This document shows positions 1-30,199 of a stretch of DNA of 51,677 nt, piece by piece. Source of the DNA: Stegostoma tigrinum (Eukaryota); contig NC_081387.1 of the NCBI RefSeq assembly GCF_030684315.1, positions 27,596,970-27,648,646 of the forward strand, written 5' to 3'. Each line of letters opens with the position of its first letter. Position 1 is the stretch's first letter. Under the pieces are notes generated by a model that had not been told where the DNA came from, searched no databases, and worked only from the letters and a program-made list of their open reading frames with translations. The position numbers and the translations under genes are program-made.

Positions 1-17
1 TTGAAGGTCGTTGAGGG

Positions 18-27
18 GGGATTTTCC
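18..27 (+). promoter_or_regulatory. NF-kB consensus site upstream of tapasin
   Basis: GGGATTTTCC matches GGGRNNYYCC, about 400 bp upstream of the tapasin ATG. Confidence 0.5.
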
Positions 28-303
28 TGTGAGCCCGGTGCTGTTTCTGTAGAAAGGTCACACTTGCAGTTAAAGTGGGGAGACAAGCATTGGGCGGGGG
101 GGGAGGGGTGTGGGGGGTCTCTCCTTCCTTCCCAAACCAGCACCCCGCGGGGAGAGTGTGTCAGGGACACGGGGGATGGGGGTGGGGGTTCTGTGTTACT
201 GCCGTCCCTCCCCCCCGACCATGTCACACACGCACACACAGAGAGAGGGAGAGGGAGAGGGAGGGGGAGGGAGAGGGAGGGGGAGGGAGGTCCGCATTTA
301 CAG

Positions 304-326
304 GAAACAGAAATGAAAGTAAAAGT
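304..326 (+). promoter_or_regulatory. Tandem IRF-E/ISRE-like element
   Basis: GAAACAGAAATGAAAGTAAAAGT contains overlapping GAAA-NN-GAAA cores about 100 bp upstream of the ATG; peptide-loading genes are interferon inducible. Confidence 0.55.
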
Positions 327-419
327 GCGAGATCTCTGGGCGCTTGCCTGGTTTCGAAGCTGTGTTGAGTTGGGGGACAGGAGACGGTGGAACACTGGCT
401 CAGTCGCTGCTCGCTGGAG

Positions 420-474
420 ATGGAGTTTCTGTTTTATAAACTGCCCCTCATCCTCAGCGTCTGCTCAGTCCCAG
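420..474 (+). CDS. TAPBP: Tapasin exon 1 (signal peptide MEFLFYKLPLILSVCSVP)
   Basis: ATG at 420 with purine at -3 and G at +4, hydrophobic leader, donor CCAG|gtaaaa at 475, phase 1 matching exon 2. Confidence 0.7.
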
Positions 475-814
475 GTAAAACAGCTAAACTCTTGTGCCAG
501 CCTCTTGTTGTCTGTAAGGAGGGAGGGAGAGAGGGGGAGGAAGGGCAGGGACTGTTAGCCCCCTTCCAGCCACACCAACAGCAATTTAATGATGGAACTG
601 TGCTGAGTGAAGCAGCTTTGTGTAAGCGAATGGCTCTGTTTCTGCCAGGTCCTGGAGAGATTCCCACCTCCCAGGGGCCAGGCCTCTCCTCGCCCTGCCT
701 GGCCTGCTGATTTCCTCCAGGCAGGGTGCTGTATCCACGCTACCACGTTCCTCTGGCAGTTGTGAGGCTGACTGTGTCCAAGCAACCCACTGCTGTCCGG
801 CCCAGACACAGACA

Positions 815-1498
815 NNNNNNNNNNNNNNNNNNNNNNNNNNNNNNNNNNNNNNNNNNNNNNNNNNNNNNNNNNNNNNNNNNNNNNNNNNNNNNNNNNNNNN
901 NNNNNNNNNNNNNNNNNNNNNNNNNNNNNNNNNNNNNNNNNNNNNNNNNNNNNNNNNNNNNNNNNNNNNNNNNNNNNNNNNNNNNNNNNNNNNNNNNNNN
1001 NNNNNNNNNNNNNNNNNNNNNNNNNNNAGACAGACAGAGCGGGAGAGAGAGAGACAGACGGAGCGGGAGAGAGAGAGAGACAGAGAGAGAGAGGCAGAGA
1101 CAGAAACAGACAGAGAGACAGAGAGAGAGAGATGGAGAGAGAGGGAGAGACAAAGCGAGACACAAAGATAGAGACAGAGAGAGACAGACAGAGCGGGAGA
1201 GAGAGAGAGAGACGGAGCGGGAGAGAGAGAGACAGACGGAGCGGGAGAGAGAGAGAGACGGACAGAGCGGGAGAAAGAGAGACAGACGGAGCGGGAGAGA
1301 GAGAGACAGAAGACAGAAACNNNNNNNNNNNNNNNNNNNNNNNNNNNNNNNNNNNNNNNNNNNNNNNNNNNNNNNNNNNNNNNNNNNNNNNNNNNNNNNN
1401 NNNNNNNNNNNNNNNNNNNNNNNNNNNNNNNNNNNNNNNNNNNNNNNNNNNNNNNNNNNNNNNNNNNNNNNNNNNNNNNNNNNNNNNNNNNNNNNNNN
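815..1498. other. Two assembly gaps (815-1027, 1321-1498) flanking a (GA)n/(GACA)n simple repeat
   Basis: N runs; 1028-1320 is purine-rich microsatellite. Confidence 0.95.
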
Positions 1499-2583
1499 AT
1501 CTCCAAGTTTGCAGATGATACCAGGTTGGGTGGGAGGGTGAACTGTGAGAAGAATGCAGAGATACTTCAGCATGATCTGGTCAGGTTGGGTGAGTGGGCA
1601 AATGGCAGATGCAGTATAAATTGGATAAAATGAGAGGTTATTTACTTGGGAAGTGAAAACGAGACGGCAGATTACTACCTGAATGGCTGTGAATTGGGAG
1701 AGGGGAGTGTGCAGTGGGACCTGGGTGTCCTTGTGCACCAGTCGTTGAAGGGAAGCATGCAGGTGCAGCACGTGGTTAAGAAGGTAAATGGTGTGTCGGC
1801 CTTCATTACGAGAGGCTTTCGTGTACAGGAGCAGGGATGTGTTGTTGCAGTTATACAGGGCCTTGGTGAGGTCACACCTGGAATATTGTGTGCAGTTTTG
1901 GTCTCCTTTTCTGAGGAAGGATGCTCTTGCTCTCGAGCGAGTGCAGTGAAGGTTAGAACATAGAACATAGAACAATACAGCACAGAAAAGGCCCTTCAGC
2001 CCTCAATGTTGCGCCGACCTGTGAACTAATCTAAGCCCCTCCCCCTACACTATCCCATCAATATCCATATGCTTATCCAAGGACTGTTTAAATGCCCCGA
2101 ATGTGGTTTACCAGGCTGATTCTGGGGAAGGTGGGTCTGATATATGACAACAGATTGAGTGGGTTAGCATTGTTTTTGCTGGAGTTCATAAGAACGAGGC
2201 GGGATATCTCATAGAGACTTATAAAATTCTAACAGGACTGGACAGGGTGGATGCAGGGAGGATGTTCCCGATGGTGGGTGTGTCCAGAACCAGGGGTCAC
2301 GCTTCTAGTATTCGGGGTAGACCAGTTAGGATGGAGATGAAGAGACATTTCTTCACCCAAAGAGCGGTGAGCCTGTGGAATTCATGATCACAGGGAATAG
2401 TTGGTGCCAGAACATTGAATGCATTGAAGAGGCAACTAGATATAGAATTGGGGTGAATGGGATTGAAGGTTACGGGGAGAAAGCAGGATGCGGCTGTTCA
2501 GTTGGACGATCAGCTATAGTCATGATGAATGGTGGTGCAGGCTGGAAGGGCCAAATGGCCTGCTCCTTTCTTCTATGTTTCTA
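1499..2583 (+). mobile_element. Decayed CR1-type LINE 3' fragment, interrupted at about 1953-2105 by an inverted LINE/SINE tail
   Basis: KFADDT-like start (AAGTTTGCAGATGATACC), DLGVLVHQSLK and RSHLEYCVQFWSP-like segments, RGDLIETYK-like segment, frameshifted. Confidence 0.85.
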
Positions 2584-2774
2584 AGATCAGTAGGGACTGC
2601 TGGTCTGTTTTACACTCCACGTAGAGCATGCCAGCTTCAGTTGTCAGTATTCCTTGGCGTGTTCTTGCATTGTATTTACATTGAGAAGGAACCTCTCGCC
2701 CAATGCTCCCCATCCTGGGGAGACTGAAATCCATTTGCTTGTTTCCACTTGTTTAACCAATTTTTTAAAGATAC

Positions 2775-3070
2775 TGACTCATGGAATGAGGGTGCCTCTT
2801 GCTGGGCCAACATTTATTGCCCATCCCTAATTGCCCAGGGGCAGTCAAGAGACAATCACATTGCTGTAAGCCAGGCCAGGTAAGGACGGCAGTTTCCTTC
2901 CCCAAAGGACATTAGTGAGCCAGGTGGGTTTATCCCAACAATCGACAACGGGTTCATGGTCATCATTAGATCCTTAATTCCAGATATTTTTTATTGCATT
3001 CAAATTCCAACCTGGGTCCCCAGGACATTAGCAGAGTTTCTGGTTTAATAGTCTGGTGGTAATACGCCTC
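2775..3070 (-). mobile_element. tRNA-derived SINE (Deu-domain/SacSINE1-like)
   Basis: Shares the GGTAAGGACGGCAGTTTCCTTCCC..AAGGACATTAGTGA core with copies near 10.5k, 11.4k, 37.2k and 45.3k. Confidence 0.65.
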
Positions 3071-3259
3071 CAGCCACCCTGAATCCTGAGACCCCCACAC
3101 GCTCTCACACTCCCCCAGCTCAGGATAGTGTGCAGAGACTTCTACTGTGCAAAAATAGGCCATTCAGCCCATCAGGCCCACTCCTGCTGACAAAGATCTG
3201 ACTGTACTCATCCCCTTCTCCCAGTTAGAGCATGGTGGAGCTGTGCTCCACCTTGACCT

Positions 3260-3950
3260 CACAGATCACTGAAGGTGAAAGGACAGGGAGAGAGAGAGAG
3301 AGACCAGTGAGTAGAGCACACAGTGCCCTCAGCTTTATTAACGGGGCACAGAGTACAGGAGCAAGGAGGCGATGCTGACCTTGTACAAGCCCCATGTTAG
3401 ACCCCCAGCTGGAGTATCATGTCCAGCTGTGGGCCCCACATTATGGGAAAGATGTGAACCCATCGGAGGGAGAGGGCAGAAGCGATTTACAACAACGGTT
3501 CCAGGGAATGGGTAATGTCAGCGATGGGGATAGACTGGGGAAGGTGGGGCTGTTCCCCTCGGATACAAGGAGGCTCACAGGGAGGTCTGGTAGAGGCTTC
3601 CCAAATCCCGAGCGGGGGGCTGGGCAGGGGGAGGGAGGGAGAAGCTGTTCCTGCTTGGAAAAGGAACAGGAATGAGACGGAAACAGATTTAAAGTGATGT
3701 ACAAATGAAGCGAGAGTGAAGCGAGGAGAGACTCTCTCACCCAGTGGGTAGTGAGGGTGTGGGATGTACTGACTGCAAACATGGGGGAGGGGAGGTGTCA
3801 GGTTCAATGGAGGCATTCCAGAGGGGCATTGGATGAATATTTAGATGGAAATGGGGGTCAGGAGGAAAGGGCAGGAAATTGGGCACTGGGCAATGATGTT
3901 TGTTTGAAGAGCTAGTGTGGGAACGATGGGCCCAATGGCATCCTATGGGG
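3260..3950 (+). mobile_element. Decayed CR1 fragment; 3260-3820 nearly identical to 23790-24341
   Basis: PQLEYHVQLWAPHYGKDV motif; same idiosyncratic sequence at both loci. Confidence 0.8.
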
Positions 3951-4102
3951 CTATTTCTGCCTACCCCCACAATCTCCTACCAACAAAGTCTAAACCTCCA
4001 CTTCAACAAACCTTTTGATCATCTTAACTGCACCCAGTCCTATCCCTGCACGGTAAGTGGAGCTTGTCGCAGTACAGCACTCTTTCCTCACAATGTAACC
4101 CC

Positions 4103-4269
4103 NNNNNNNNNNNNNNNNNNNNNNNNNNNNNNNNNNNNNNNNNNNNNNNNNNNNNNNNNNNNNNNNNNNNNNNNNNNNNNNNNNNNNNNNNNNNNNNNNN
4201 NNNNNNNNNNNNNNNNNNNNNNNNNNNNNNNNNNNNNNNNNNNNNNNNNNNNNNNNNNNNNNNNNNNNN
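4103..4269. other. Assembly gap
   Basis: N run. Confidence 0.99.
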
Positions 4270-4430
4270 GTGACTGCCAACACACTTTCTGAGACCTCCT
4301 GATACACTGTCAGGTCATTGCTTTTGACTGGAGGGACTCAGTGGGCTGATGGCTCATATTCTGTAAAGTGGACCAACATGAGTCAATCTGTTTTCCCCAG
4401 GGAGTGCTGTCGGCACTGTCTCTCAGCATC

Positions 4431-5272
4431 ACTGTAGCCCTGTGTTCCTGGGCAGCACTGAGCGAAGGTGGTCTCTCTGAGAACATTGGCGCTCTGGATG
4501 ACTGTAGCCCTGTGTTCCTTGGCAGCACTGAGCGAAGGGGGTCTCTCTGAGAACATTGGCGCTATGGATGACTGTAGCCCTGTGTTCCTTGGCAGCACTG
4601 AGCGAAGCGGGTCTCTCTGAGAACATTGACGCTCTGGATGACTGTAGCCCTGTGTTCCTTGGCAGCACTGAGCGATGGCGGTCTCTCTGAGAACATTGGC
4701 GCTCTGGATGACTGTAGCCCTGTGTTCCTGGGCAGCACTGAGCGAAGGGGGTCTCTCTGAGAACATTGGCGCTCTGGATGACTGTAGCCGTGTTCCTTGG
4801 CAGCATTGAGCGATGGCGGTCTCTCTGAGAACATTGGCACTCTGGATGACTGTAGCCCTGTGTTCCTGGGCAGCACTGAGCGATGGGGGTCTCTCTGAGA
4901 ATATTGGCACTCTGGTTGGCTGTAGCCCAATGTTTCTAGGCAGCACTGAGCGAAGGGGGTCTCTCTGAGAATATTGGCGCTCTGGATGACTGTAGCCCTG
5001 TGTTCCTGGGCAGCACTGAGCGAAGGGGGTCTCTCTGAGAACATTGGCACTCTGGTTGGCTGTAGCCCTGTGTTCCTAGGCAGCATTGAACGAAGGGGGT
5101 CTCTCTGAGAACATTGGCACTCTGGTTGGCTGTAGCCCTGTGTTCCTAGGCAGCATTGAGCGAAGGGGGTCTCTCTGAGAATATTGGCACTCTGGATGAC
5201 TGTAGCCCTGTGTTCCTTGGCAGCATTGAGCGATGGCGGTCTCTCTGAGAATATTGGCACTCTGGTTGACTG
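4431..5272 (+). repeat. 70-bp minisatellite, 12 copies, made of the tapasin intron1/exon2 junction
   Basis: ACTGTAGCCC recurs at 4431, 4501, 4571 etc.; one unit is 68 bp; the last copy runs directly into the DCWFVEE coding sequence. Confidence 0.95.
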
Positions 5273-5445
5273 CTGGTTTGTGGAAGAAGGTGGTGGAAAG
5301 AACAGCTTCCCCAGTTCCATTACCCAGGAACCAGCCACCCTGCTCCTTCGCCACATCCCATATGAGGATGGAGAGCTTCCAGAACTTCCTGCCAACCTGC
5401 CCCTGCCATCTGAGCTGAAGCCCGGCTGGTTCTTCGAAGTGAGAG
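5224..5445 (+). CDS. TAPBP: Tapasin exon 2 (ALSDGGLSENIGTLVDCWFVEE...PATLLLR...FFEVR)
   Basis: CWFVE and PATLLLR match the recalled tapasin N-terminus (ECWFVED...PGALLLR); acceptor ccctgtgttccttggcag, donor G|gtaag; 222 nt, phase 1-1. Confidence 0.88.
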
Positions 5446-5546
5446 GTAAGCGGTGGGGGGTGAGGTGGGAGCGGAATTTGAACCAGCTGAGCGCGAGCGA
5501 AGTGTACGTGTTATAACCCCTCATTGTGTTCCCTCTCTCCCAACAG

Positions 5547-5819
5547 ATTACTCACGGATCACGGCCCACCCCGGGTTTAGGGAACCGAGAAGCCCGAAGG
5601 AGAAGCCGTACTGCGAGATTAATAAGTATGGCCCGCAGGATTCTCACGTCTCCTGGGCCTCCCGCCTGACCAAAGATGAAAAGACTCCAGCCTATCAGTC
5701 CAGCTCCTGGTTCTGCAGCCACCTCCGCACTTTCGACCTGTCCTTCAGTGTGGCCAGTGTCCATCGGGTCACCTCAGGCCTCAGGGAGAAGGATCTTCTC
5801 TCTCCGCTTCACACCTCAG
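5547..5819 (+). CDS. TAPBP: Tapasin exon 3 (N-terminal domain, PYCEINKYGP...WASRLT)
   Basis: Aligns without gaps to recalled human PHCEMSRFVP...WASGLT; caacag| acceptor, G|gtat donor; 273 nt. Confidence 0.9.
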
Positions 5820-6849
5820 GTATCGGCCACATTAGCCTAACGCGCCCAGTGTACTCCACCTCTGCCCACTGCCCATCACCCACCTGGCCAGCACTTACTG
5901 CCTGTCCACTCTCCCCCCAACACCATCCCGTGCCAACCCCGACCGCTGAGGGTCTTGAAGTCTTGCATAGGTCAGTGTGAGCAACAAGCAGTCATTAACT
6001 ACTCGCAGCAGTCATCCTGACGCTCCCTAATTCCAGCTGTTTGATGCAGTCTGCCAGGCCTGAGATTGTCCACATCTCCAGATTAACAGCTGAGTGATCC
6101 AACCACAAAGCTCTGGCCTCCCAACACTGGCCTGACACAGTAAACAGAAGGATTAGCAACTTTTAGCAAGACACCAAAGCCACATGCTGAGGCCCCGAGC
6201 TTGAGCCTGAGTTGAGGGATTGGTCCTCAACCAACATCTCCAAATCCAACAGCCGTAGTCTGCGTGACTCCCTGCCCCCACTCACTGAGGCACGGATCTC
6301 ACAAGGGGAGTTTGGCGAGAGGATCGGCAACCAGGGACCACAGATTTTAGATAACTCGCAAGGGAAGTTAAAACAGTAAGAGCTTCTGCAGCCATAAGAA
6401 AGTGAGAGAGTAGCGAAATTGAATGAGAGGGTGAGACTGGGGCATTAATGACGGAAAATAGAAACATGGGAGGCTTTGGAACAGTATCTTTTATCTGTCT
6501 TTAAGGCAGGAGGCAGAAAATAAAATCCCAAAAAAGACCAGAAGAATCAAGAGGGAAGCAGGAACATAAAACAACCATGATCTGAAGAGACAGGGTGTTC
6601 GGATTTTGTTGGGAATTCAGGACTGCAGTCAATGGTCCACACATGGGAATTGGAAAAGTGGACACAGTGACAGCGAATGGATTGGCTGCAATCCTTCAGA
6701 GTTCTGTGAAGGTGCGAGCAGATGGGAAAGCTGCAGATGTAACACCATTTCTGAAGAAAGGAGAGAGACAGGAAGCAGGAGAATATAAACCACGAAAGCA
6801 CTGGGACATCACTGGAGTCTGATAGGGATAGGGGAGTCAAAAAGTTCAT

Positions 6850-7700
6850 ACAACTCCCACAGTGTGGCATCAGGCCATTCAGCCCATCAAGATCACACTG
6901 ATTCTCCAAACAGCATCCCACCCAGAACCACACAATCCCCGTAACCGCACATTTCCCACGGCCAATCCCACCCTAGCCCGCACATCCCTGGGCACCACGG
7001 GACAATTTAGCACGGCCAATCCACCCTAACCCGCACATCCCTGGACACTATGGGACAATTTAGCACGGCCAACCCACCCTAACCCGCACATCCCTGGGCA
7101 CTATGGGACAATTTAGCACGGACAATCCACCCTAACCCGCACATCCCGGGGCACTATGGGACAATTTAGCACAGCCAACCCACCCTAACCTGCACATCCC
7201 TGGGCACTATGGGACAATTTAGCATGGCCAATCCACCCTAACCTGCACATCCCTGGGCACTATGGGACAATTTAGCACGGCCAATCCACCCTAACCTGCA
7301 CATCCCTGGGCACTATGGGACAATTTAGCATGGCCAATCCACCCTAACCTGCACATCCCTGGGCACTATGGGACAATTTAGCACGGCCAATCCCACCCTA
7401 ACCTGCACATCCCGGGGCACTACGGGACAATTTAACACGGCCAATCCCACCCTAACCTGCACATCCCTGGACACTACGGGACAATTTAGCACGGCCAATC
7501 CCACCCTAACCCGCACATCCCTGGGCACTATGGGTCAATTTAGCACGGCCAATCCACCCTAACCTGCCTACCTTTGGACTGTGAGAGAAAACCCACGCAG
7601 ACACAGGGAGAATGTGCAAACTCCACAGTGATGGTCGCCCGAGGGTGGGGTTGAACTCGGGTCCCTGGCGCCATGAGGCAGCAGCGCTAACCGCTGAGCG
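6850..7700 (-). mobile_element. tRNA-derived SINE (HE1/V-SINE-like) with an internal expanded minisatellite
   Basis: Minus strand begins GCTCAGCGGTTAGCGCTGCTGCCTCA...GAGTTCAACCC (A- and B-box-like); CR1-like tail near 6850-6900. Confidence 0.7.
6957..7567 (+). repeat. 53-bp minisatellite, about 11.5 copies
   Basis: Unit GGCCAATCCACCCTAACCTGCACATCCCTGGGCACTATGGGACAATTTAGCAC; TATGGGA at 7261 and 7314. Confidence 0.95.
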
Positions 7701-7908
7701 AACTGTCGGGTTGCCATAAATTTAGAAGAATGCTGGGGTGGGGTGTTCTTGTAGAACGGTATAAAATTTCGAAGGTAGGAGCAGGGAAGATTTTTTCACT
7801 CAGTGAGGAGACAGTGAGCATGTTATAAAAACCCTCCAATGCATTCCAAGCTCTGCGGTGCAACCTGACACACTCTGCCTCCTGTAACGCTGACCTTTCC
7901 TCTCCCAG

Positions 7909-8250
7909 TCGTCCTGAATGTCTTCACCCGCACACCAAGCGTGAAGACAGGGCTGAAGCGTGATGTCCTCCTGGACTGCGGTTTCACCATGGACAGGCAG
8001 ACCGGCTTTGCCATCGAGTGGCGTTACCAGTTCAAGGGGAGCGGGCACCTGGTTTACGCCTACAATGGCGCCCAGGATCGAGTGGACTTGGCACAGGCGG
8101 GCACCGAAATGTTCTTTTACGAGGCGCACAGTCGGGGAAACGCCTCACTCTTGATCCGGAACGTGGAAATGAGGCATGAAGGGAGCTACATCTGCACGGT
8201 CTACATGCCGAACCTCCACGCTCAGCAATCCATGGACCTCGAGATCACAG
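7909..8250 (+). CDS. TAPBP: Tapasin exon 4 (IgV-like domain)
   Basis: VVLNVFTRTPSV...LLDCGF...IEWRYQFKGSGHL...GNASL...EGSYICTVYMP; ctcccag| and G|gtaaa junctions; 342 nt. Confidence 0.93.
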
Positions 8251-8394
8251 GTAAAACTCAATAACCCCAGCCGTTCTCAAAATGGTCAGCACACTCCAAA
8301 CTGATAACTCTGTCTGTCTCTCTCTCTCTCTTTCTCCGCATGTCACTGCCAGAGTTTCTCCAGCAATTTCCCTTCACGTTGCTGCTCTTTTTCT

Positions 8395-9050
8395 CAAATT
8401 TATTCCTGGGATGTGGGTCTCTCTAGCCGGACCCAGCATTTATTGCCCCGTCCCTAGCTGCCCCCCCCTTGAGAAGGTGGGGGTGAGCTGCCCTCCTTGA
8501 ACCCCTGCAGTCCATGTGCTGAGGGGTGACCCACAATGCCCCTTAGGGGGTGAATTTCAGGGATTCTGACCCAGTGACACTGAAGGAACGGGGATATATT
8601 TCCAAGTCAGGATGGGGAGGGGCTTGGAGGGGAACTTGAGGGGCATTGCGTTCCCATGTATCTGCTGCCCCTTGTCCTTCTGGATGGAAGTGGTTTGTGG
8701 GTTTGGAAGGTGCTGCCTGAGGGTCTTTGGTGAATCTCTGCAGAGCATCTTGTAGATGGTACACACTGCTGCGACTGAGCGTCGGTGGGGGGAGGGAGTG
8801 GGATGTTTGTGGATGTGGTGCCAATCGAGCGGGGGCTGCTTTGTCCTGGATGGTGTCGAGCTCCCTGAGTGTTGTTGGGGCTGCCCCCATCCAGGGGCAA
8901 GTGGGGGGTATTCCCTCACACTCCTGCCTTGTGCCTTGTAGATGGTGGGACAGGGTTTGAGGGAGTCAGGAGGGGAGTTACTCACCACAGGATTCCCAGC
9001 CTCTGACCCACTCTTGTAGCCGCTGTGTTTATGTCGGGGGGAGTCCAGTT
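8395..9050 (-). mobile_element. LINE 3' fragment (CR1/L2-group lineage distinct from the main CR1 family)
   Basis: TIYKAQ.RSV.EY.PLA, LDTIQDKAA and HRRSVAAVCTIYKM motifs across frames; 3' tail similar to the Deu-type SINE tail. Confidence 0.7.
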
Positions 9051-9539
9051 CCATGCAAGACAGTATATAGAGAGGGACTTGGAACACTTACAAAGGGACT
9101 GCAGGGCTGAGAGCTAAGAACCGGCCTGAGATATCACCGAATTCCCAGGAGAACAATCAGAGCGCCGTTGGTTTGCATGTGAGCTCTGGGTGAGGTAACG
9201 TTAATCTCGGAAACAGTTGAACAATAAGGAATTGTCCATTGATGACCAAGATGAGGGGAAATAATTTTCTCACAGAGGGCGGTGAATCTCAAAAGGCAGG
9301 GTTTCTGGGTAGGTCGAAGGCAGTGTTCGGCCGATAGGTTATGGGGGTTGTCTAGGAGAGAATGCGGACCAGTCAACTGAATGGAGGCACATTGAAGGGC
9401 TGTTTGGCAGCTTCACAGTCCCAGTCCACATGGTCACGGACAGTACCGAGCTGGGAGGGAGGGGATGGCTCGAAGGGCCGAACGGCCTACTCCTGCCCCT
9501 AGCTCGTATGTTCTTATGGCTGCAGTGAGATGGCGAGAG

Positions 9540-10395
9540 GCTGTCGGAGTGGGCACAGAAAGGCCCAGTCTATTGTGGGTCAATGTGCGGGTATCTTCAT
9601 TGGGAGCAAAAATCCAGGAATGGGGATAAATTGGGAAGAGTGGGAGGTACAAAGAGGCCCTGGGGGTCCTTGTGCACCAGCTGCTGAAGGCAACGTTAGA
9701 AAGGCAAATGGTACCTGGGCCTTCATACCGAGGGGGTGCCAGCACAGGAGCTCGCATCTGTTGTTGCAATCGGACAGGGGCCGTGGTGGGACCGCACCTG
9801 GAGGACAGCACCACATTGTGGGCAGAAGGGCCTGCATCTGTGCTGCACTGTTCTATTGTGTGCAGGTTTGGGGTCTCCCTCTCTGGGGAAGGGTATCCTG
9901 GCAATGGAGGGGGTGCAGACTGACCCCTGGGGTAGTGGCTGACAGACAGAGAGAGATTGGATCGGTTAGGGTTCTATTCTCTGGGGGTTTAGAAGATTGC
10001 CGGGGGGGATCTCATAGAAACCTGTAAAATCCTAACAGGGCTAGGCAAAACACACAGGAAGGGTGTTCCCGATGTCCGGTGGGGTGGGGGGGGAGACCAG
10101 GAGCAGGGGCTCATTCCCGAAGGATACAGGGTAAGCCTGTTAGGGACTGAGATGGGGACAAATGTCTTCACCCAGAGAGCGGGGAATGTGTGGGATTCTC
10201 TGGCCCAGAAAGTGGTTGACTTTCATTCATGGAATGATTTCAAGAAGGAGTTGGATACAGTTTCTGGGGCTAAAGGGATGGAAGGGAGTCAGGGAGAGAA
10301 GGCAGGAACAGGGGACGGAGTTGGATGGTCAGCCGGGATCCTATTGAATGGAGGGAACAGACTCGACGGGCTGAATGGCCCCCTCCTGCTCCTGT
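9540..10395 (+). mobile_element. Decayed CR1 fragment
   Basis: Degenerate DLGVLVH, RPHLE and GDLIET motifs plus the CR1 3' UTR. Confidence 0.7.
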
Positions 10396-10499
10396 TTCGG
10401 TTGCCTGCCAGGCCTGCTTGTGGAGAAGGGGGTAGGGCCAATTCCCCAGGCGACCAAGAAGAAGTTTTCAAAAACATATTTTTATCAGCTGTGAACTGT

Positions 10500-10790
10500 A
10501 CCAGCTAAGCCCATCCCTAATTGCCCCAGAGGGCAGTTAAGAGTCAAACACATTGCTGTGGGTCTGGAGTCAGGTGTAGGCCAGACCAGGTAAGGATGGC
10601 AGTTTCCTTCCCTAAAGGACATTAGTGAACCAGGTGGGATTGACAGTGGATTCACGGTCATCATTAGATTCTTAATTGCAGCTATTTTATTGAATTCAAA
10701 TTCCACCACCCGCCCTGACGGGACTCGAACCCCGGCTCCCCCAAGATGTGGGCTGCCTGGGTTACGAACCTAGCGATGACGCCATGAGGC
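10500..10790 (-). mobile_element. Deu-type SINE copy
   Basis: Same core as 2775-3070; B-box-like GGTTCGAGTCC on the minus strand near 10722-10732. Confidence 0.7.
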
Positions 10791-10958
10791 CGCGGTCTAT
10801 CCCAGCTCCGGAGCGCGTGGGTGAACGGCACAGCGGGTCTGCTGGAGCCGGCCTGTGCCTTCTTCCTGGCTGCGCCCATCTTCAGTGAGGGTGTGGGGGT
10901 GTGGGGGTGGCTTGGCTGAGAGCTGGTTACTAATTCACCCAAACCTCTGCTCTGACAG

Positions 10959-11285
10959 AGCCCCCCAAGGTGACAATGAGCCCCGATCCCCTGGACCTGG
11001 TGCCCGGGCGGGAGCAAACGGTGATCTGTGATATCAGCTCCTACTACCCACTGGACGTGACGGTCAGCTGGACGAGGAAGAGGGCCGCTGGGAACAGTAG
11101 CTCCGAGCCCGTCGCCAACAGCGTGCTGAGTGGCCACCGGCAGAACCCGGACGGCACCTACAATATGAGCAGCTACATCACCGTGCAACCATCCTGGGAG
11201 GACCACCACTCCGTCTACACATGCCACATCAGCCACGTTTCCGTCAAGACCCCTATCCGAAAGAGCATCACCTTAAACGTCGCAG
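10959..11285 (+). CDS. TAPBP: Tapasin exon 5 (IgC1 domain)
   Basis: EPPKVT...ICDISSYYPLDVTVSW...DGTY...YTCHISH, C1-set signature; tgacag| and G|gtaaa junctions; 327 nt. Confidence 0.95.
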
Positions 11286-11404
11286 GTAAAGAGGGCCATT
11301 CGGCCCTGAAACAGGCCCTTCGCCCCCAACTCCCCCGCGTCAACCCCCTTCCCCAATCCAAACCCATTGCCCTGCATTTATCCCCCTATCCACGTGTCTT
11401 TTCT

Positions 11405-11757
11405 CTCACTCATTCACGGGGTGTGAGCATCGCTGGCTGTGTCAGCCATTTACTGCCCCATCCCCAATTGCCCCAGGGGGCAGTTCAGAGTCAACCCCAT
11501 TGCTGTGGGTCTGGAGTCACGTGTAGGCCAGACCAGGTAAGGATGGCAGTTTCCTTCCCCAAAGGACATTAGTGACCCAGATGGGTTTTCCCAACCATTG
11601 GAAATGGATTCACGGTCATCATTAGATCCTTAATTCCACATATTTTTATTGAATTCACATTCCACCATCTGACGTGGTGCGATTCGAACCCAGGTCCCCT
11701 GAATGTTACCTGGGACTCTGGATTAACAGAGCAGTGATAAATCCCCCAGGCCATCAC
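11405..11757 (-). mobile_element. Deu-type SINE copy
   Basis: Same core; GGTTCGAATC B-box on the minus strand near 11681-11690. Confidence 0.7.
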
Positions 11758-14231: not shown

Positions 14232-15020
14232 TGGGAAAGTGGGTGTGGGGGTGAATGTGAACGAGGAGACCACTCACTGTGAAATATCCTCACGGGTGGG
14301 AAAGTGGGGGGGTGGGGGGGGGTGAATGTGAACGAGGAGACCGCTCACTGTGAAATATCCTCACGGGTGGGAAAGTGGGGGGGTGGGGGGGGGGTGAGAA
14401 TGTGAACGAGGAGACCGCTCACTGTGAAATATCCTCACGGGTGGGAAAGTGGGGGGGTGGGGGGGGGTGAGAATGTGAACGAGGAGACCACTCACTGTGA
14501 AATATCCTCACGGGTGGGAAAGTGGGGGGGTGGGGGGTGTGAGAATGTGAACGAGGAGACCGCTCACTGTGAAATATCCTCACGGGTGGGAAAGTGGGGG
14601 GGTGGGGGGTGTGAGAATGTGAACGAGGAGACCGCTCACTGTGAAATATCCTCACGGGTGGGAAAGTGGGGGGGTGGGGGGGTGAGAATGTGAACGAGGA
14701 GACCACTCACTGTGAAATATCCTCACGGGTGGGAAAGTGGGGGGGTGGGGGGGTGAATGTGAACGAGGAGACCACTCACTGTGAAATATCCTCACGGGTG
14801 GGAAAGTGGAGGGGTGGGGGGGTGAGAATGTGAACGAGGAGACCACTCACTGTGAAACATCCTCACGGGTGGGAAAGTGGGGGGGTGGGGGGTGTGAGAA
14901 TGTGAACGAGGAGACCGCTCACTGTGAAACATCCTCACGGGTGGGAAAGTGGGGGGGTGGGGGGGGGGGGTGAATGTGAACGAGGAGACCGCTCACTGTG
15001 AAATATCCTCACGGGTGGGG
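14232..15020 (+). repeat. About 72-bp G-rich minisatellite, about 11 copies
   Basis: Unit GGGTGGGAAAGT(G)nT(G)nTGAGAATGTGAACGAGGAGACCGCTCACTGTGAAATATCCTCAC; CACGGGTG at 14581 and 14653. Confidence 0.95.
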
Positions 15021-15082
15021 GCAGCTGGTGAAGGCAGGTCCTGATTGGCATTTCTACTAATTCGCTCATCTTCTCCCCGCAG

Positions 15083-15184
15083 GAGCGTCTGGTCCTTCCA
15101 TGGATGATGTGATCGGCATGTTACTGTGCTCGTTTGTTCTGTACGGGACGTTAAAATTCCTCCACTGGGTGTTCAGCGAGAAAG
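15083..15184 (+). CDS. TAPBP: Tapasin exon 6 (transmembrane, GASGPSMDDVIGMLLCSFVLYGTLKFLHWVFSEK)
   Basis: Matches recalled GLSGPSLEDSVGLFLSAFLLLGLFKALGW including the intramembrane Lys; ccgcag| and G|gtaaa junctions; 102 nt. Confidence 0.93.
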
Positions 15185-15309
15185 GTAAATGGGCCCAGTC
15201 CTTCCCGCCGAGCTCCTGTCCCTTCATAATGACAAACATCTCCATCGTGGGTTATAGAGAGAGGGCCCCTTCACTCCCGACAAACTCCACAATGGGAAAG
15301 CACCGAGAC

Positions 15310-15905
15310 TGGAGCTGAATGAGGCCATTCAGCCCCTCGAGTCACCTCTGCTTTTCGCAGCCGATGTGTTTCCCAGCCCTGTTCTCCTGCCTTCTCCCCG
15401 TAACCTTTACCAACCAAGACCCTATCTCTCTCCATCTTAAACACACTCAATAACTTCACCCCCCCCCCCCCCTTCTGTGGCAGAGTCCCACAGATTCCCC
15501 CACAAATTCTTCCTCATCTCAGCTCAATAGGGCTGTCCCTTCACTCTGAGGCTGTGCCCTCAGGTCCTGGTCTCTCCTGCTCATGGAAACATTAACTCCA
15601 CATCCGCTCTATCCAGGCCTCTGTAAGTTTCAATCAGGTCCCTCCCCCCGCTCATCCATCTTAATTCCATCAAATACAGGCCCAGAGTCCTCACCGATTC
15701 CTCACATTGACAAACCCTTCGTCCCCTGGGATCATTCATGTAAACCTCCTCTTGACCCCCCCCCAAAGACCAGCACATCCTTCCTTAGATACGGGGCCCA
15801 AAACTGCTCACAATATTCCAAACACAGTCTGACCAGAGCCTTATACAGCCTCTGCAGAACGCCTCTGCTCTTGTTTTCTAGCCCTTTCAAAATGAACTCT
15901 AACAT
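15310..15905 (-). mobile_element. CR1 3' fragment
   Basis: LYKALVRL.LEYCEQFWAPYLRKDV motif. Confidence 0.85.
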
Positions 15906-16084
15906 TTCTGGAAGCTGGTCCATAAACCACACGTATCTCTGGCCCAGTTTTAGACCTCCTGCTCTAACACAAATCAGTTTTAATCCAGGTTCTCCATGCA
16001 CTTTCCAATGGTGTGCATTCACAGCAGGATCTGCTACTGTTTCTGAGTGATGGGTGAACATTGCTGTGTGTGTTTTTTTCACAG

Positions 16085-16125
16085 TTTATCCTTTGGTCTT
16101 TGGATCAGCAGAAGAAGCAGCAAAG
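16085..16125 (+). CDS. TAPBP: Tapasin exon 7 (cytoplasmic, VYPLVFGSAEEAAK)
   Basis: Strong acceptor ttttttcacag|, donor AAG|gtaag; 41 nt, phase 1 to 0. Confidence 0.8.
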
Positions 16126-16217
16126 GTAAGACCACAGCCAGTGTTTGGCATTGACTGAGGGCAAAGGTGATGGAGATAAACCTCAGAGCAACTTCCTCCA
16201 TTAGAGCTGGGAAAAGG

Positions 16218-17708
16218 AGGGCTATTCCTGCTGGTTATTGGGAGCCATTCCTGCTGGTTATCGGGGGCTATACCTGCTGGTTATTGGGAGCCATTCCTGC
16301 TGGTTATCGGGAGCTATTCCTGCTGGTTATCAGGAGCTATTCCTGCTGGTCAGTGGGAGCTATTCCTGCTAGTTATCGGGAGCCATTCCTGCTGGTTATC
16401 AGGAGCTATTCCTGCTGGTTATCAGGAGCTATTCCTGCTGGTCAGTGGGAGCTATTCCTGCTAGTTATTTGGAGCCATTCCTGCTGGTTATCAGGAGCTA
16501 TTCCTGCTGGTCAGTGGGAGCCATTCCTGCTGGTTATCGGGGGCTATTCCTGCTGGTTATCAGGAGCTATTCCTGCTGGTCAGTGGGAGCTATTCCTGCT
16601 GGTCAGTGGGATCTATTCCTGCTGGTCAGTGGGAGCTATTCCTGCTAGTTATCGGGAGCCATTCCTGCTGGTTATCAGGAGCTATTCCTGCTGGTTATTG
16701 GGAGCCATTGCTGCTGGTTATCAGGGGCTATTCCTGCTGGTTATCAGGAGCTATTCCTGCTGGTCAGTGGGAGCTATTCCTGCTGGTCAGTGGGAGCTAT
16801 TCCTGCTGGTCAGTGGGGGCTATTCCTGCTGGTCAGTGGGAGCTATTCCTGCTGGTCAGTGGGAGCTATTCCTGCTAGTTATCGGGAGCCATTCCTGCTG
16901 GTTATCAGGAGCTATTCTTGCTGGTCAGTGGGAGCTATTCCTGCTAGTTATTGGGAGCCATTCCTGCTGGTCAGTGGGAGCTATTCCTGTTGGTTATCGG
17001 GAGCCATTCCTGCTGGTTATCGGGGGCTATTCCTGCTGGTTATCAGGAGCTATTCCTGCTGGTCAGTGGGAGCTATTCCTGCTGGTCAGTGGGATCTATT
17101 CCTGCTGGTCAGTGGGAGCTATTCCTGCTAGTTATCGGGAGCCATTCCTGCTGGTTATCAGGAGCTATTCCTGCTGGTTATTGGGAGCCATTGCTGCTGG
17201 TTATCAGGGGCTATTCCTGCTGGTTATCAGGAGCTATTCCTGCTGGTCAGTGGGAGCTATTCCTGCTGGTCAGTGGGGGCTATTCCTGCTGGTCAGTGGG
17301 AGCTATTCCTGCTGGTCAGTGGGAGCTATTCCTGCTAGTTATCGGGAGCCATTCCTGCTGGTTATCAGGAGCTATTCCTGCTGGTTATTGGGAGCCATTC
17401 CTGCTGGTTATCGGGGGTTATTCCTGCTGGTTATCAGGAGCTATTCCTGCTGGTCAGTGGGAGCTATTCCTGCTGGTCAGTGGGAGCTATTCCTGCTGGT
17501 TATCAGGAGCTATTCCTGCTGGTCAGTGGGAGCTATTCCTGCTGGTCAGTGGGAGCTATTCCTGCTGGTTATCAGGAGCTATTCCTGCTGGTCAGTGGGA
17601 GCTATTCCTGCTGGTCAGTGGGAGCTATTCCTGCTGGTTATCAGGAGCTATTCCTGCTGGTCAGTGGGAGCTATTCCTGCTGGTCAGTGGGAGCTATTCC
17701 TGCTGGTT
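16218..17708 (+). repeat. 23-bp minisatellite, about 65 copies, with a 483-bp higher-order duplication
   Basis: Unit GGGAGCTATTCCTGCTGGTCAGT and a variant ending GGTTATC; GGGAGC at 16861 and 16884. Confidence 0.95.
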
Positions 17709-24445: not shown

Positions 24446-24611
24446 GGAATAATCCTGGGATATTTTGCTGTCTGTTAGGAATGGTCATATTTTACATACT
24501 CATCACAATCATAAAGTCCTTACAGGGCATTTGGCCCATCGAGTCCAGACTGAGCCACCAAAGACATCTCACTATGACCCATCTCTTCACCCCATCCCAC
24601 ATTCCTCACGG

Positions 24612-25860
24612 GCAATCCCACCCTAACCCGCACATCCCTGGGCACTATGGGACAATTTAGCACGGCCAATCCACCCTAACCAGCACATCCCTGGGCACTA
24701 TGGGACAATTTAGCACGGCCAATCCCACCCTAACCTGCACATCCCTGGGCACTATGGGACAATTTAGCATGGCCAATCCACCCTAACCTGCACATCCCTG
24801 GGCACTATGGGACAATTTAGCACAGCCAATCCCATCCTAACCCGCACATCCCTGGGCACTATGGGAGAATTTAGCACGGCCAATCCACCCTAACCTGCAC
24901 ATCCCTGGGCACTATGGGAGAATTTAGCACGGCCAATCCACCCTAACCTGCACATCCCTGGGCACTATGGGAGAATTTAGCACGGCCAATCCACCCTAAC
25001 CCGCACATCCCTGGGCACTATGGGACAATTTAGCACGGCCAATCCACCCTAACCTGCACATCCCTGGGCACTATGGGAGAATTTAGCACGGCCAATCCAC
25101 CCTAACCCGCACATCCCTGGGCACTATGGGACAATTTAGCACGGCCAATCCCACCCTAACCTGCACATCCCTGGGCACTATGGGAGAATTTAGCACGGCC
25201 AATCCACCCTAACCCTCACATCCCTGGGCACTGTGGGACAATTTAGCACAGCCAATCCCACCCTAACCTGCACATCCCTGGGCACTATGGGAGAATTTAG
25301 CACGGCCAATCCACCCTAACCCTCACATCCCTGGGCACTATGGGACAATTTATCACGGCCAATCCACCCTAACCTGCACATCCCTGGGCACTACGGGACA
25401 ATTTAGACGGCCAATCCCACCCTAACCCGCACATCCCTGGGCACTATGGGAGAATTTAGCACGGCCGGTCCACCCTAACCTGCACATCCCGGGGCACTAC
25501 GGGACAATTTAGCACGGCCAACCCACCCTAACCCGCACATCCCTGGGCACTATGGGAGAATTTAGCACGGCCAACCCACCCTAACCCGCACATCCCTGGG
25601 CACTATGGGACAATTTAGCACGGCCAACCCACCCTAACCCGCACATCCCTGGGCACTATGGGAGAATTTAGCACGGCCGGTCCACCCTAACCCGCACATC
25701 CCTGGGCACTATGGGACAATTTACCACGGCCAACCCACCCTAACCCGCACATCCCTGGGCACTATGGGACAATTTAGCACGGCCAATCCACCCTAACCCG
25801 CACATCCCTGGGCACTATGGGACAATTTAGCACGGCCAGTCCACCCTAACCTGCACATCT
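24612..25860 (+). repeat. 53-bp SINE-derived minisatellite, about 23 copies (same unit as 6957-7567)
   Basis: Same unit; flanked by SINE remnants (GGCATTTGGCCCATCGAG upstream, CACATCTTTGG..GGGAGGAAACC downstream). Confidence 0.95.
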
Positions 25861-26829: not shown

Positions 26830-27830
26830 CCCAGTCCCACAGGGAGATCAGAGTGAGGGGGCCCAGACCCACAGGAGGATCGGAGTGAGGGGACCCAGTC
26901 CCACGGGGGGGATCGGAGTGAGGGGGCACAATGCCACAGGGGGGATCGGAGTGAGGGGGCCCAGACCCACAGGAGGATCGGAGTGAGGGGACCCAGTCCC
27001 ACGGGGGGGATCGGAGTGAGGGGGCACAATGCCACAGGGGGGATCGGAGTGAGGGGGCCCAGACCCACAGGGGGATCAGAGTGAGGGGGCCCAGACCCAC
27101 AGGAGGATCGGAGCGAGGGGGTCCAGTCCCACGGGGGGGATCGGAGTGAGGGGGCCCAGACCCACGGGGGGATCAGAGTGAGGGGGCCCAGACCCACAGG
27201 GGGATCAGAGTGAGGGGGCCCAGTCCCACGGGGGGATCGGAGTGAGGGGGCCCAGTCCCACTGGGGGATCGGAGTGAGGGGGCGCAGTCCCACTGGGGGA
27301 TCGGAGTGAGGGGGCCCAGTCCCACGGGGGGATCGGAGTGAGGGGGCGCAATCCCACGGGGGGATCGGAGTGAGGGGGCGCAATCCCACGGGGGGATCGG
27401 AGTGAGGGGGCGCAGTCCCACGGGGGGATCGGAGTGAGGGGGTGCAGTCCCACGGGGGGATCGGAGTGAGGGGGCTCAGTCCCGGGGTGGATTGGAGTGA
27501 GGGGGCGCAGTCCTGGGGGGGATCAGAGTGAGGGTCCCAGTCCCAGGGGGGATTGGAGTGAGGGGGCGCAGTCCCGGGGGGATCGGAGTGAGGGGGCGCA
27601 GACCCGGTGGGGATCGGTGTGAGGGGGTGCAGTCCCGGGGGATCAGAGTGAGGGGGCATAGTCCCACGGGGGGGGGATCGGAGTGAGGGGGCTCAGTCCC
27701 ATGGGTGGATCGGAGTGAGGGGGCGCAGTCCCAGGGGGGATCGGAGTGAGGGGGCACAGTCCCGGTTGGGGGATCGGAGTGAGGGGCTGCAGACCCAGGG
27801 GGGAATCGGTGTGAGGGGGCGCAGTCCCAT
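26830..27830 (+). repeat. About 32-bp G-rich minisatellite, about 31 copies
   Basis: Unit GGGGGATCGGAGTGAGGGGGCGCAGTCCCACG. Confidence 0.95.
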
Positions 27831-27884
27831 AGCAGAGCCAGCACTGCCGGCAGGGACTTGTGCTCTGGTTCTGTCAGCATACAG

Positions 27885-28390
27885 CGTGAGCCCCAGAACA
27901 CCATCAACAGCGAGTCCCGGAGCAGCACGAAGGCTGTGAGTCCTGGAGCAGCACGAGGGCCGTGAGCCACGGAGCAGCACGAGGGCTGTGAGCCCCAGAG
28001 CAGCGTGCGAAGGCTGTGAGCCCCGGAGCAGCACAAGCGCCGTGAGCCACGGAGCAGCACGAGGGCTGTGAGCCCTGGAGCAGCGCGTGAGCAGTGAGTC
28101 CCGGAGCAGCACGAGGGCTGTGAGCCACGGAGCAGCACGCAAAGGCTGTGAGTCCCGGAGCAGCACGCGAAGGCTGTGAGTCCCGGAGCAGCACGAGGGC
28201 CGTGAGCCACGGAGCAGTACGCGAAGGCTGTGAGTCCCGGAGCAGCACGAGGGCCGTGAGCCACGGAGCATCACGCAGGCTGTGAGTCCCGGAGCAGCAC
28301 GTGAGCAGTGAGTCCCGGAGCAGCACGAGGGCCGTGAGCCACGGAGCAGCACGCGAAGGCTGTGAGTCTCGGAGCAGCACGAGGGCTGTG
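27885..28390 (+). repeat. About 26-28-bp CpG-rich minisatellite
   Basis: Unit GTGAGCCCCGGAGCAGCACGAGGGCT with variants. Confidence 0.9.
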
Positions 28391-30080: not shown

Positions 30081-30199
30081 GTTGTTCCACTTACCTGAAG
30101 CTCAGATGTCACCATAAGAAGGCAGACACTCTCGAAGACTTTCACTGCAACTCTCCTACAACGTTGCACATGAACCAAAAAGGACATTGTATTAAGTGT

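What the first reader, a model, noticed from the sequence alone, without database searches (positions are those of the whole stretch)
4431..5445. Splice-acceptor VNTR: the tapasin exon 2 acceptor is present 12 times and only the last copy makes protein
Seen: each 70-bp unit carries the pyrimidine tract, CAG acceptor and first ~47 nt of exon 2 (acceptor G at 4455, 4525, 4595, 4665, 4735, 4803, 4873, 4943, 5013, 5083, 5153, 5223). The unit boundary falls at an ACTG microhomology shared by intron (tcACTGtag) and exon (tgACTGctg). Because 70 is not a multiple of 3, splicing to an upstream copy reads ALSEGGLSENIG.. and hits a TGA in the next unit (e.g. from 5154: ...DDCSPVFLGSIERWRSL-stop). Inference: 11 near-identical decoy acceptors could divert transcripts to NMD, making repeat copy number a heritable dial on tapasin level and thus on MHC class I peptide editing. 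It may instead be neutral if exon definition always picks the last site.
Basis: partly seen in the sequence, partly recalled or inferred. Interest (0 to 1): 0.85.

Follow-up and report, generated by a model that had tools for sequence, protein, structure and literature searches.

The report
Shark tapasin acceptor repeated twelve times
A 70-base minisatellite in a shark tapasin gene copies the start of exon 2 with its splice acceptor twelve times, the assembled RNA uses only the last copy, and so it looks like a mostly silent by-product and not a shown expression dial.

Summary
At 4431-5272 a 70-base unit is repeated 12.1 times at 92% match. The gene is tapasin: the whole codons of exons 1-4 are letter for letter those of the public zebra shark (Stegostoma tigrinum) model XP_059495426.1.

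All 11 upstream acceptors would give a stop 199-897 bases before the exon 2 donor. Only 5223/5224 stays open.

One spliced contig (run X6, depth 367) joins 474 to 5224. No contig of the two RNA-like runs lies on the upstream units. The public zebra shark and whale shark models have the same N-terminus. Contigs cannot exclude rare decoy use. Copy-number variation and sister-species arrays could not be tested.

The closest known kind is the donor-side boundary minisatellite of human F7, CBS, LMNB2 and PDGFA (PMC1557585). This locus is the acceptor-side mirror image, and four literature searches found no such case.

The window is minisatellite-rich: arrays cover 17.6% of it. Unchecked scan notes list other junction-built minisatellites elsewhere in this genome, none at this locus.

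The NMD "dial" is unsupported but not refuted.

The parts
420..474 (+). Coding part of tapasin exon 1 (start codon to donor; phase 1; GT at 475-476)
   Evidence: Sequence. Codons 420-473 are identical to residues 1-18 of P0152. The X6 contig joins 474 to 5224.
475..5223 (+). Intron 1 (4749 bases, GT..AG); contains three N runs that were not filled
   Evidence: Joint 'skips 4749, GT..AG (cut +3)' in run X6; N runs listed.
4431..5272 (+). Minisatellite of 12 units of 70 bases (unit 6 is 68). Each unit holds about 25 bases of the intron 3' end plus about 45 bases of the exon 2 5' end. ACTG is shared at both ends.
4431..5198 (+). Units 1-11 with 11 pseudo-acceptors (G of AG at 4455, 4525, 4595, 4665, 4735, 4803, 4873, 4943, 5013, 5083, 5153). 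All are out of frame and lead to a stop. Three of them (4943, 5083, 5153) lack the TGAC branch-like motif at -24.
   Evidence: Runs X5 and X6 show zero depth on bins 4371-5130; the bin that holds acceptor 5153 also holds the start of exon 2, so it says nothing about unit 11.
5199..5268 (+). Unit 12, which holds the acceptor actually used (AG at 5222-5223)
   Evidence: Joint 474 to 5224 in X6 record 30; exon 2 codons match P0152 from residue 20.
5224..5445 (+). Tapasin exon 2 (222 bases): end of the signal peptide and start of the N-terminal domain, including the CWFVEE motif
   Evidence: (human tapasin residues 23-66, E 0.006).
5282..5302 (+). Purine-rich GAR stretch (enhancer-like), present only downstream of the last unit and absent from the repeated units
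   Evidence: Motif scan. The enhancer role is inferred, not tested.
5446..5546 (+). Intron 2, only 101 bases
   Evidence: Joint 5445 to 5547 in the X5 and X6 contigs.
5547..5819 (+). Tapasin exon 3
   Evidence: Codons 5549-5818 are identical to P0152 residues 94-183.

Best explanation
This is a boundary-spanning minisatellite in intron 1 of the zebra shark tapasin gene. A 70-base piece covering the last 25 or so bases of the intron and the first 45 or so bases of exon 2 was duplicated at a 4-base ACTG microhomology. It then expanded, by slippage or unequal exchange, to 12 units. The branch region, pyrimidine tract and AG are therefore present 12 times. The spliceosome uses the exon-proximal (last) copy. 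The most likely reason is that only this copy sits next to the unique part of exon 2, with its purine-rich stretch, and 222 bases from the exon 2 donor and the 101-base intron 2. The 11 upstream copies behave as silent or nearly silent pseudo-sites, and the array is a tolerated, near-neutral by-product of a minisatellite-prone region. Shown: the array, the 12 sites, the frame consequences, and use of the last site in assembled RNA. Inferred: the origin mechanism, the reason for the site choice, and neutrality.
For: Array and sites. In the -20..+3 window, 9 of 11 pseudo-acceptors differ from the real one by only 1-2 bases, and 8 of 11 keep the same TNAC branch-like motif near -24 (7 TGAC, unit 1 TCAC). 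Local signals therefore do not explain the choice. In one search, X6 record 30 (1709 letters, depth 367) joins 474 to 5224 and 5445 to 5547 with no differing letters. X5 record 23 (depth 388) covers 5238-5443 and has the same second joint. X5 and X6 show zero depth in all four bins spanning 4371-5130. The public models of Stegostoma tigrinum (P0152) and Rhincodon typus (P0002) start with the same exon 1 to last-unit product. Exons 1-4 of the window are identical to P0152. The repeated coding part is ancestral gene sequence that aligns across 13 cartilaginous-fish orthologues plus coelacanth and lungfish. The array RNA folds worse than all 20 shuffles (z +6.5), so no masking structure is needed or seen. 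The unit variants form a mosaic shared among non-adjacent units, as in exchanging minisatellites. Minisatellites cover 17.6% of the window and 16% of the gene span. In the donor-side precedents (F7 IVS7, LMNB2, PDGFA) only the exon-proximal copy is used and the identical pseudo-sites stay silent (PMC1557585: abstract, introduction passages and discussion read).
Against: Only one contig in one run actually crosses the exon 1-exon 2 junction. Contigs drop rare variants and cannot give proportions, and the predicted decoy products would be removed by NMD, so low-level use is not excluded. The X5 mRNA contig stops at 5238, exactly where the last unit stops being unique. That could reflect a branch in that run's graph, or just thin 5' coverage. 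Neutrality is inferred from base rates, not measured. All 12 AGs and pyrimidine tracts are intact despite about 9% mean divergence between units. None of the 11 unit junctions keeps the exon's own GGTTGAC, which is unexplained. The copy number rests on the assembly, because the short-read contigs of X1 and X2 break at the array edges.
Confidence: 0.7

Rival explanations
1. Decoy-acceptor dial. A share of transcripts splices from 474 to one of the 11 upstream acceptors. These transcripts carry a premature stop and are degraded by NMD, so array length sets tapasin output and is heritable.
For: Of 11 upstream acceptors, 11 give a stop 199-897 bases before the exon 2 donor, well beyond the 50-55 base NMD rule (the rule is established knowledge). 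Nine of 11 are within 1-2 bases of the real site in -20..+3. The X5 contig breaks at 5238. Tapasin level is known to matter for peptide editing (PMC9659924 and PMC9303992, abstracts in search listings only).
Against: No contig of X5 or X6 lies on 4371-5130, although the mRNA contigs have depth 367-388. The only junction-crossing contig uses 5224. Two public gene models use the same junction. In the donor-side precedents, identical pseudo-sites are not used at all (PMC1557585). No data exist on copy-number variation.
Confidence: 0.13
2. Assembly artefact: the array exists, but its length or unit order is wrong in this assembly (collapsed or over-expanded), so '12' is not the real number.
For: The contigs of X1 and X2 break at both array edges (4460; 5238/5239), and no listed piece spans the array. 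An N run lies 160 bases upstream.
Against: The DNA-like runs X1 and X2, from two samples, cover every array bin and both unique-to-repeat edges with no differing letters. The units carry distinct variant combinations that make an 842-base array easy to span with long reads. The 12.1 copies show no indels apart from one 2-base deletion.
Confidence: 0.06
3. Positive role in splicing: the reiterated branch and pyrimidine-tract copies act as a landing pad that raises local U2AF/U2 occupancy and helps recognition of exon 2 across a 4.7-kb intron.
For: There are twelve intact pyrimidine tract/AG copies. The array RNA is unusually unstructured, hence accessible.
Against: There is no direct evidence. 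Orthologues of other sharks encode the same exon start, but their introns were not seen. A minisatellite-rich context explains the array without any function.
Confidence: 0.05

Closest known systems
Human F7 intron 7 37-bp VNTR, whose first unit spans the exon 7-intron 7 boundary (Borensztajn et al. 2006, PMC1557585)
   Same: A minisatellite whose terminal unit spans a splice junction, so the authentic site is reiterated in near-identical copies. Only the exon-proximal copy is used and the others are silent pseudo-sites. Use of most other copies would break the frame.
   Different: F7 reiterates the donor (5' site) downstream of the exon, in 5-9 copies of 37 bp, and is shown to be polymorphic and tested with 50 constructs. 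Here the acceptor (3' site) with its branch region is reiterated upstream of the exon, in 12 copies of 70 bp, in a shark immune gene. There are no polymorphism or mutagenesis data.
Other donor-side boundary minisatellites listed in the introduction of PMC1557585: CBS intron 13, LMNB2, PDGFA intron 4, and an interferon-induced transcript (Turri et al. 1995)
   Same: The exon/intron junction is reiterated by a minisatellite. In LMNB2 and PDGFA only the authentic site is used.
   Different: In CBS and the interferon-induced gene, the two most proximal pseudo-donors are also used, which shows that leakage is possible. All of these are donor-side and mammalian. I read only the passages of PMC1557585 that cite them, not the original papers.
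Unproductive splicing coupled to NMD (AS-NMD) as a gene-dosage control
   Same: The alternative acceptors here would yield premature stops more than 55 bases before the next junction.
   Different: No alternative isoform was seen. No conservation or regulation has been shown. AS-NMD switches normally use one conserved poison site, not a drifting array.
Expanded CAG repeats that create splice acceptors (PMC10614865; abstract in search listing only)
   Same: A tandem repeat supplies many AG acceptors to an upstream donor.
   Different: There the repeat units are 3 bases, the acceptors are new and are used, and the result is pathological. Here whole 3' splice-site modules are copied and appear unused.

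Membership tests
Tapasin (TAPBP) gene | N-terminal domain with the CWFVE-type motif, closer to tapasin than to TAPBPR | tested here: met
   Exon 2 product against solved structures: tapasin chains score E 0.006-0.015 and TAPBPR chains E 0.08-0.15. This is weak on its own. With the public protein P0152, the named tapasins (coelacanth, lungfish, turtles) score far above the TAPBPR-named proteins.
Tapasin (TAPBP) gene | V-set then C1-set Ig domains, membrane anchor and short tail | tested here: met
   Pfam gives V-set E 3.4e-10 on exon 4 and C1-set E 6.6e-14 on exon 5. tblastn of P0152 places residues 406-456 at 15079-16131.
Tapasin (TAPBP) gene | Identity with an annotated orthologue | tested here: met
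   The whole codons of exons 1-4 (294 residues) are exact substrings of XP_059495426.1, 'tapasin-like [Stegostoma tigrinum]'.
Boundary-spanning minisatellite that reiterates a splice site (F7 IVS7 type) | Tandem array whose terminal unit spans the exon-intron junction | tested here: met
   Unit 12 (5199-5268) contains the AG at 5222-5223 and the first 45 bases of exon 2.
Boundary-spanning minisatellite that reiterates a splice site (F7 IVS7 type) | Pseudo-sites (near-)identical to the authentic site | tested here: met
   Nine of 11 differ by 1-2 bases in -20..+3; two (4803, 4943) differ by 5.
Boundary-spanning minisatellite that reiterates a splice site (F7 IVS7 type) | Only the exon-proximal copy is used physiologically | tested here: met
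   Met at contig level only. The X6 joint is 474 to 5224, no X5 or X6 contig lies on 4371-5130, and the public models of two species agree. Rare use is not excluded.
Boundary-spanning minisatellite that reiterates a splice site (F7 IVS7 type) | Copy number varies between individuals (VNTR in the strict sense) | not testable with these tools
   The short-read contigs of X1 and X2 break at the array edges.
Boundary-spanning minisatellite that reiterates a splice site (F7 IVS7 type) | Pseudo-sites are functional when the authentic site is inactivated | not tested
   This needs minigene mutagenesis.
AS-NMD (unproductive splicing) regulatory switch | The alternative site gives a premature stop more than 50-55 bases before a downstream junction | tested here: met
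   True for 11 of 11 upstream acceptors, with stops 199-897 bases before the donor at 5445 (corrected for the 2-base slip in the exon end).
AS-NMD (unproductive splicing) regulatory switch | The alternative isoform is detectable in RNA and stabilised when NMD is blocked | tested here: inconclusive
   It was not seen in the contigs of X5 and X6, but contigs cannot show absence. No raw RNA reads or NMD-block data were available.
AS-NMD (unproductive splicing) regulatory switch | Conservation of the poison site across species | not testable with these tools
   No genomic DNA of related sharks could be fetched (closed; two searches found no array-derived ORFs in the protein collection).

The most novel reading that the evidence does not exclude
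The array is a copy-number-tunable leak. A small share of tapasin pre-mRNA is spliced to pseudo-acceptors and destroyed by NMD. Alleles with different unit numbers, or with or without the TGAC branch motif in the units nearest the exon, would then set different tapasin levels, which makes a length-polymorphic expression modifier inside the shark MHC. Even if this is silent, the locus would be the first described natural acceptor-side counterpart of the F7 donor VNTR. It would be a ready-made test of how a 3' splice site is chosen among 12 equivalents.
Probability: 0.12. Interest if true: 0.75.

Novelty: new variant of a known kind. Interest (0 to 1): 0.4.

Why it matters
Minisatellites that reiterate a splice donor are classic natural models for splice-site choice (F7, CBS, LMNB2, PDGFA). 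My four literature searches found no acceptor-side equivalent. Twelve near-identical 3' splice-site modules in one intron, with the last one chosen, argue against simple first-come or 5'-to-3' scanning choice of acceptors. They point instead to exon-side context as the deciding factor. If the pseudo-sites leak, the locus would couple a fast-mutating repeat to the dose of a peptide-editing chaperone in the MHC, where dose is known to shape the presented peptide repertoire. As it stands, the evidence shows an unusual but probably silent structure.

Tried and rejected
Array-derived ORFs as a probe for other individuals or species. I searched the 320-residue minus-strand ORF through the array and a 70-residue piece of it covering all three frames. 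Neither found anything, so the protein collection holds no such ORFs and says nothing about sister species.

Dispersed repeat origin. The unit occurs only in the array within this window, so it is not a transposon-borne satellite here. The 53-base arrays, in contrast, do occur at two places in the window.

Masking by RNA structure. Rejected, because the array folds worse than all 20 shuffles.

Local signal strength as the reason for the choice. Rejected for most copies. Three copies do lack the branch-like TGAC.

An in-frame TAG acceptor 18 bases upstream of the real one, present in each unit. It is not used in the X6 contig, whose joint is at 5224.

Vorechovsky 2006 (PMC1636351). I searched its passages for duplicated 3' sites and found nothing relevant.

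No paper links Stegostoma and tapasin in the held library: the 12 papers listed of 1,569 hits showed none with the word Stegostoma.

Supplementary files were not asked for. None bears on a claim made here.

Full report
What is there. Tandem Repeats Finder gives a single array at 4431-5272: period 70, 12.1 copies, 92% matches, no indels, score 1369. A 38-base stretch of the unit matches 11 places in the 51.7-kb window with at most 3 mismatches. All 11 are inside the array, against none in 100 shuffles. Each unit holds about 25 bases of the intron 3' end (branch-like TGAC, pyrimidine tract, CAG) and about 45 bases of the exon 2 5' end. An ACTG is shared by the left edge (4431-4434) and the exon just after the last unit (5269-5272). 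Unit 6 has lost 2 bases. The differences between units are a mosaic of about eight variants shared among non-adjacent units, and pairwise differences run from 2 to 13 of 70. That is the usual picture of a minisatellite that exchanges between units.

The gene. My own model was searched exon by exon, and the joined step was left out of all searches.
- The exon 2 product aligns to human tapasin residues 23-66 (E 0.006), ahead of TAPBPR (E 0.08).
- Exon 4 is a V-set domain and exon 5 a C1-set domain.
- A search with the exon 4 product alone returned P0002. Cluster look-up names P0002 as tapasin of Rhincodon typus, with the cluster member P0152 named tapasin-like of Stegostoma tigrinum, XP_059495426.1.
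- The whole codons of exons 1, 2, 3 and 4 of the window are exact substrings of P0152, at residues 1, 20, 94 and 185.
- tblastn places the remaining exons out to 16131.

The window is therefore almost certainly zebra shark tapasin. Exon 1 is 420-474, intron 1 is 475-5223, exon 2 is 5224-5445, intron 2 is only 101 bases, and exon 3 is 5547-5819. An alignment of the first 130 residues of 15 orthologues shows that the repeated coding part is ancestral. It covers the end of the signal peptide and the residues before CWFVEE, and it is present in all 13 cartilaginous fishes as well as coelacanth and lungfish. The array was therefore built from the gene, not the other way round.

Consequences of using each copy. 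In a script I joined exon 1 to each candidate exon 2, for translation only. Of 11 upstream acceptors, 11 reach a stop after 42-49 codons. That stop lies 199-897 bases before the exon 2 donor. One search printed distances 2 bases larger because I set the exon end at 5447. Only 5223/5224 stays open. By the established 50-55 base rule, such transcripts would be NMD substrates. That step is inference.

Which copy is used. The look-up of sequencing runs listed no run on record as RNA. I laid X1, X2, X5 and X6 on 1-5700, and all four are contigs, not raw reads.
- X5 and X6 behave as RNA because their contigs are spliced.
- X6 record 30 (1709 letters, word depth 367) joins 471 to 5221. With three ambiguous letters this is the GT..AG cut 474 to 5224. 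It also joins 5445 to 5547, with no differing letters. Exactly 222 bases lie between the two joints, so no extra unit is included.
- X5 record 23 (1665 letters, depth 388) covers 5238-5443 and has the same second joint, but it does not reach exon 1.
- Neither run has any contig on the four bins spanning 4371-5130.
- X1 and X2 behave as DNA. Their contigs are unspliced and cover all array bins. They break at 4460 and at 5238/5239, as expected for 31-letter word assemblies at a repeat.

The dominant transcript therefore uses the last copy. The public models of two species give the same N-terminus. Limits: only one contig crosses the junction, contigs drop rare forms and cannot give proportions, and NMD would hide the predicted products. 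The X5 contig ends at 5238, exactly where the last unit ceases to be unique against unit 7. This may be a graph branch or only thin 5' coverage, and I could not resolve it.

Why the last copy. Local signals do not decide the choice.
- In -20..+3, 9 of 11 pseudo-acceptors differ from the real one by 1-2 bases, and pyrimidine content is 9-11 of 17 in all copies.
- Eight of 11 keep the same TNAC branch-like motif near -24 (7 TGAC, unit 1 TCAC).
- The three that lose the motif (4943, 5083, 5153) include the two nearest the real site.
- RNA structure does not mask the decoys. The 921-base stretch folds worse than all 20 dinucleotide shuffles, z +6.5.

What is unique to the last copy is its downstream context. 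It has the non-repeated part of exon 2 with a purine-rich stretch at 5282-5302, the donor 222 bases away, and a 101-base intron 2. I infer exon-side definition and proximity as the mechanism. This is not tested.

Comparison with known cases. PMC1557585 (abstract, introduction passages and discussion read) describes the human F7 intron 7 37-bp VNTR. Its first unit spans the exon-intron boundary, and only the exon-proximal donor is used. The identical pseudo-donors are competent but silent. The paper's introduction lists further donor-side cases.
- LMNB2 and PDGFA use only the authentic site.
- CBS and an interferon-induced gene also use the two nearest pseudo-sites.

The shark array is the acceptor-side mirror image. 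Four searches for an acceptor-side boundary minisatellite listed none. This covers only the held library and the listed hits. I therefore file the locus as a new variant of a known kind.

Base rate. Minisatellites cover 9120 of 51677 bases of this window (17.6%) and 16% of the tapasin gene span. Unchecked notes of this scan list other junction-built minisatellites elsewhere in the same genome, and two recombination-signal arrays that follow-up agents judged neutral. I did not test those notes, and they are leads only. Together with the RNA result, they make a tolerated by-product the most economical reading (0.7). The decoy/NMD dial remains possible (about 0.13). It needs raw junction counts, NMD block and population genotyping, none of which these tools could give.

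Verdict. Interest is moderate: the locus is a neat natural model for 3' splice-site choice in an MHC gene, with no evidence yet that it does anything.

Noticed in passing
window 296-330: An interferon-response-like element (GAAA-N-GAAA-type repeats, 'GGAAACAGAAATGAAAGTAAAAG') lies about 100 bases upstream of the tapasin start codon, next to a long GA-rich tract at 240-290. It fits an interferon-inducible promoter. The motif name is recalled, not tested.
   Followed up: no
window 6957-7567 and 24607-25859: Two arrays (11.5 and 23.5 copies) share the same 53-base consensus unit. One lies in tapasin intron 3 and the other about 17 kb downstream. A scan note (s1-882321) describes a SINE-internal 53-bp segment that expands into minisatellites elsewhere in this genome.
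   Followed up: partly
window 14241-15019: A 72-base x 10.7 (or 143-base x 5.4) G-rich minisatellite ends about 60-75 bases before the acceptor of the transmembrane exon (about 15079-15183). It is a second array that abuts a tapasin 3' splice region without including it.
   Followed up: no
window 16221-17708: A 23-base x 64.7 array starts about 90 bases after the end of the last coding match (16131), probably inside the tapasin 3' UTR. The lengths of the mRNA contigs (about 360 bases beyond the stop) would fit contigs that break inside it.
   Followed up: no
window 26830-30081: A dense block of three or more different minisatellites (32-, 26/132- and 59-base units, up to 31 copies) occupies more than 3 kb.
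   Followed up: no
window 4431-5272, unit junctions: None of the 11 unit-to-unit junctions keeps the exon's own GGTTGAC. Eight read GGATGAC and three read GGTTGGC. The T and G variants are completely linked inside the array.
   Followed up: partly
window 5238: The RNA-like contig of run X5 ends at the same base where the DNA-like contigs of X1 and X2 break, which is the first base of the 31-letter word shared by units 12 and 7. The contig of X6 runs on into exon 1.
   Followed up: partly
one search run list: Organism B (DNA runs from 2015-2021) holds about 0.12 of the 31-letter words of 4270-11600. If the differences are spread evenly, that is roughly 6-7% divergence. It is a close relative whose locus could show whether the array is shared.
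   Followed up: no
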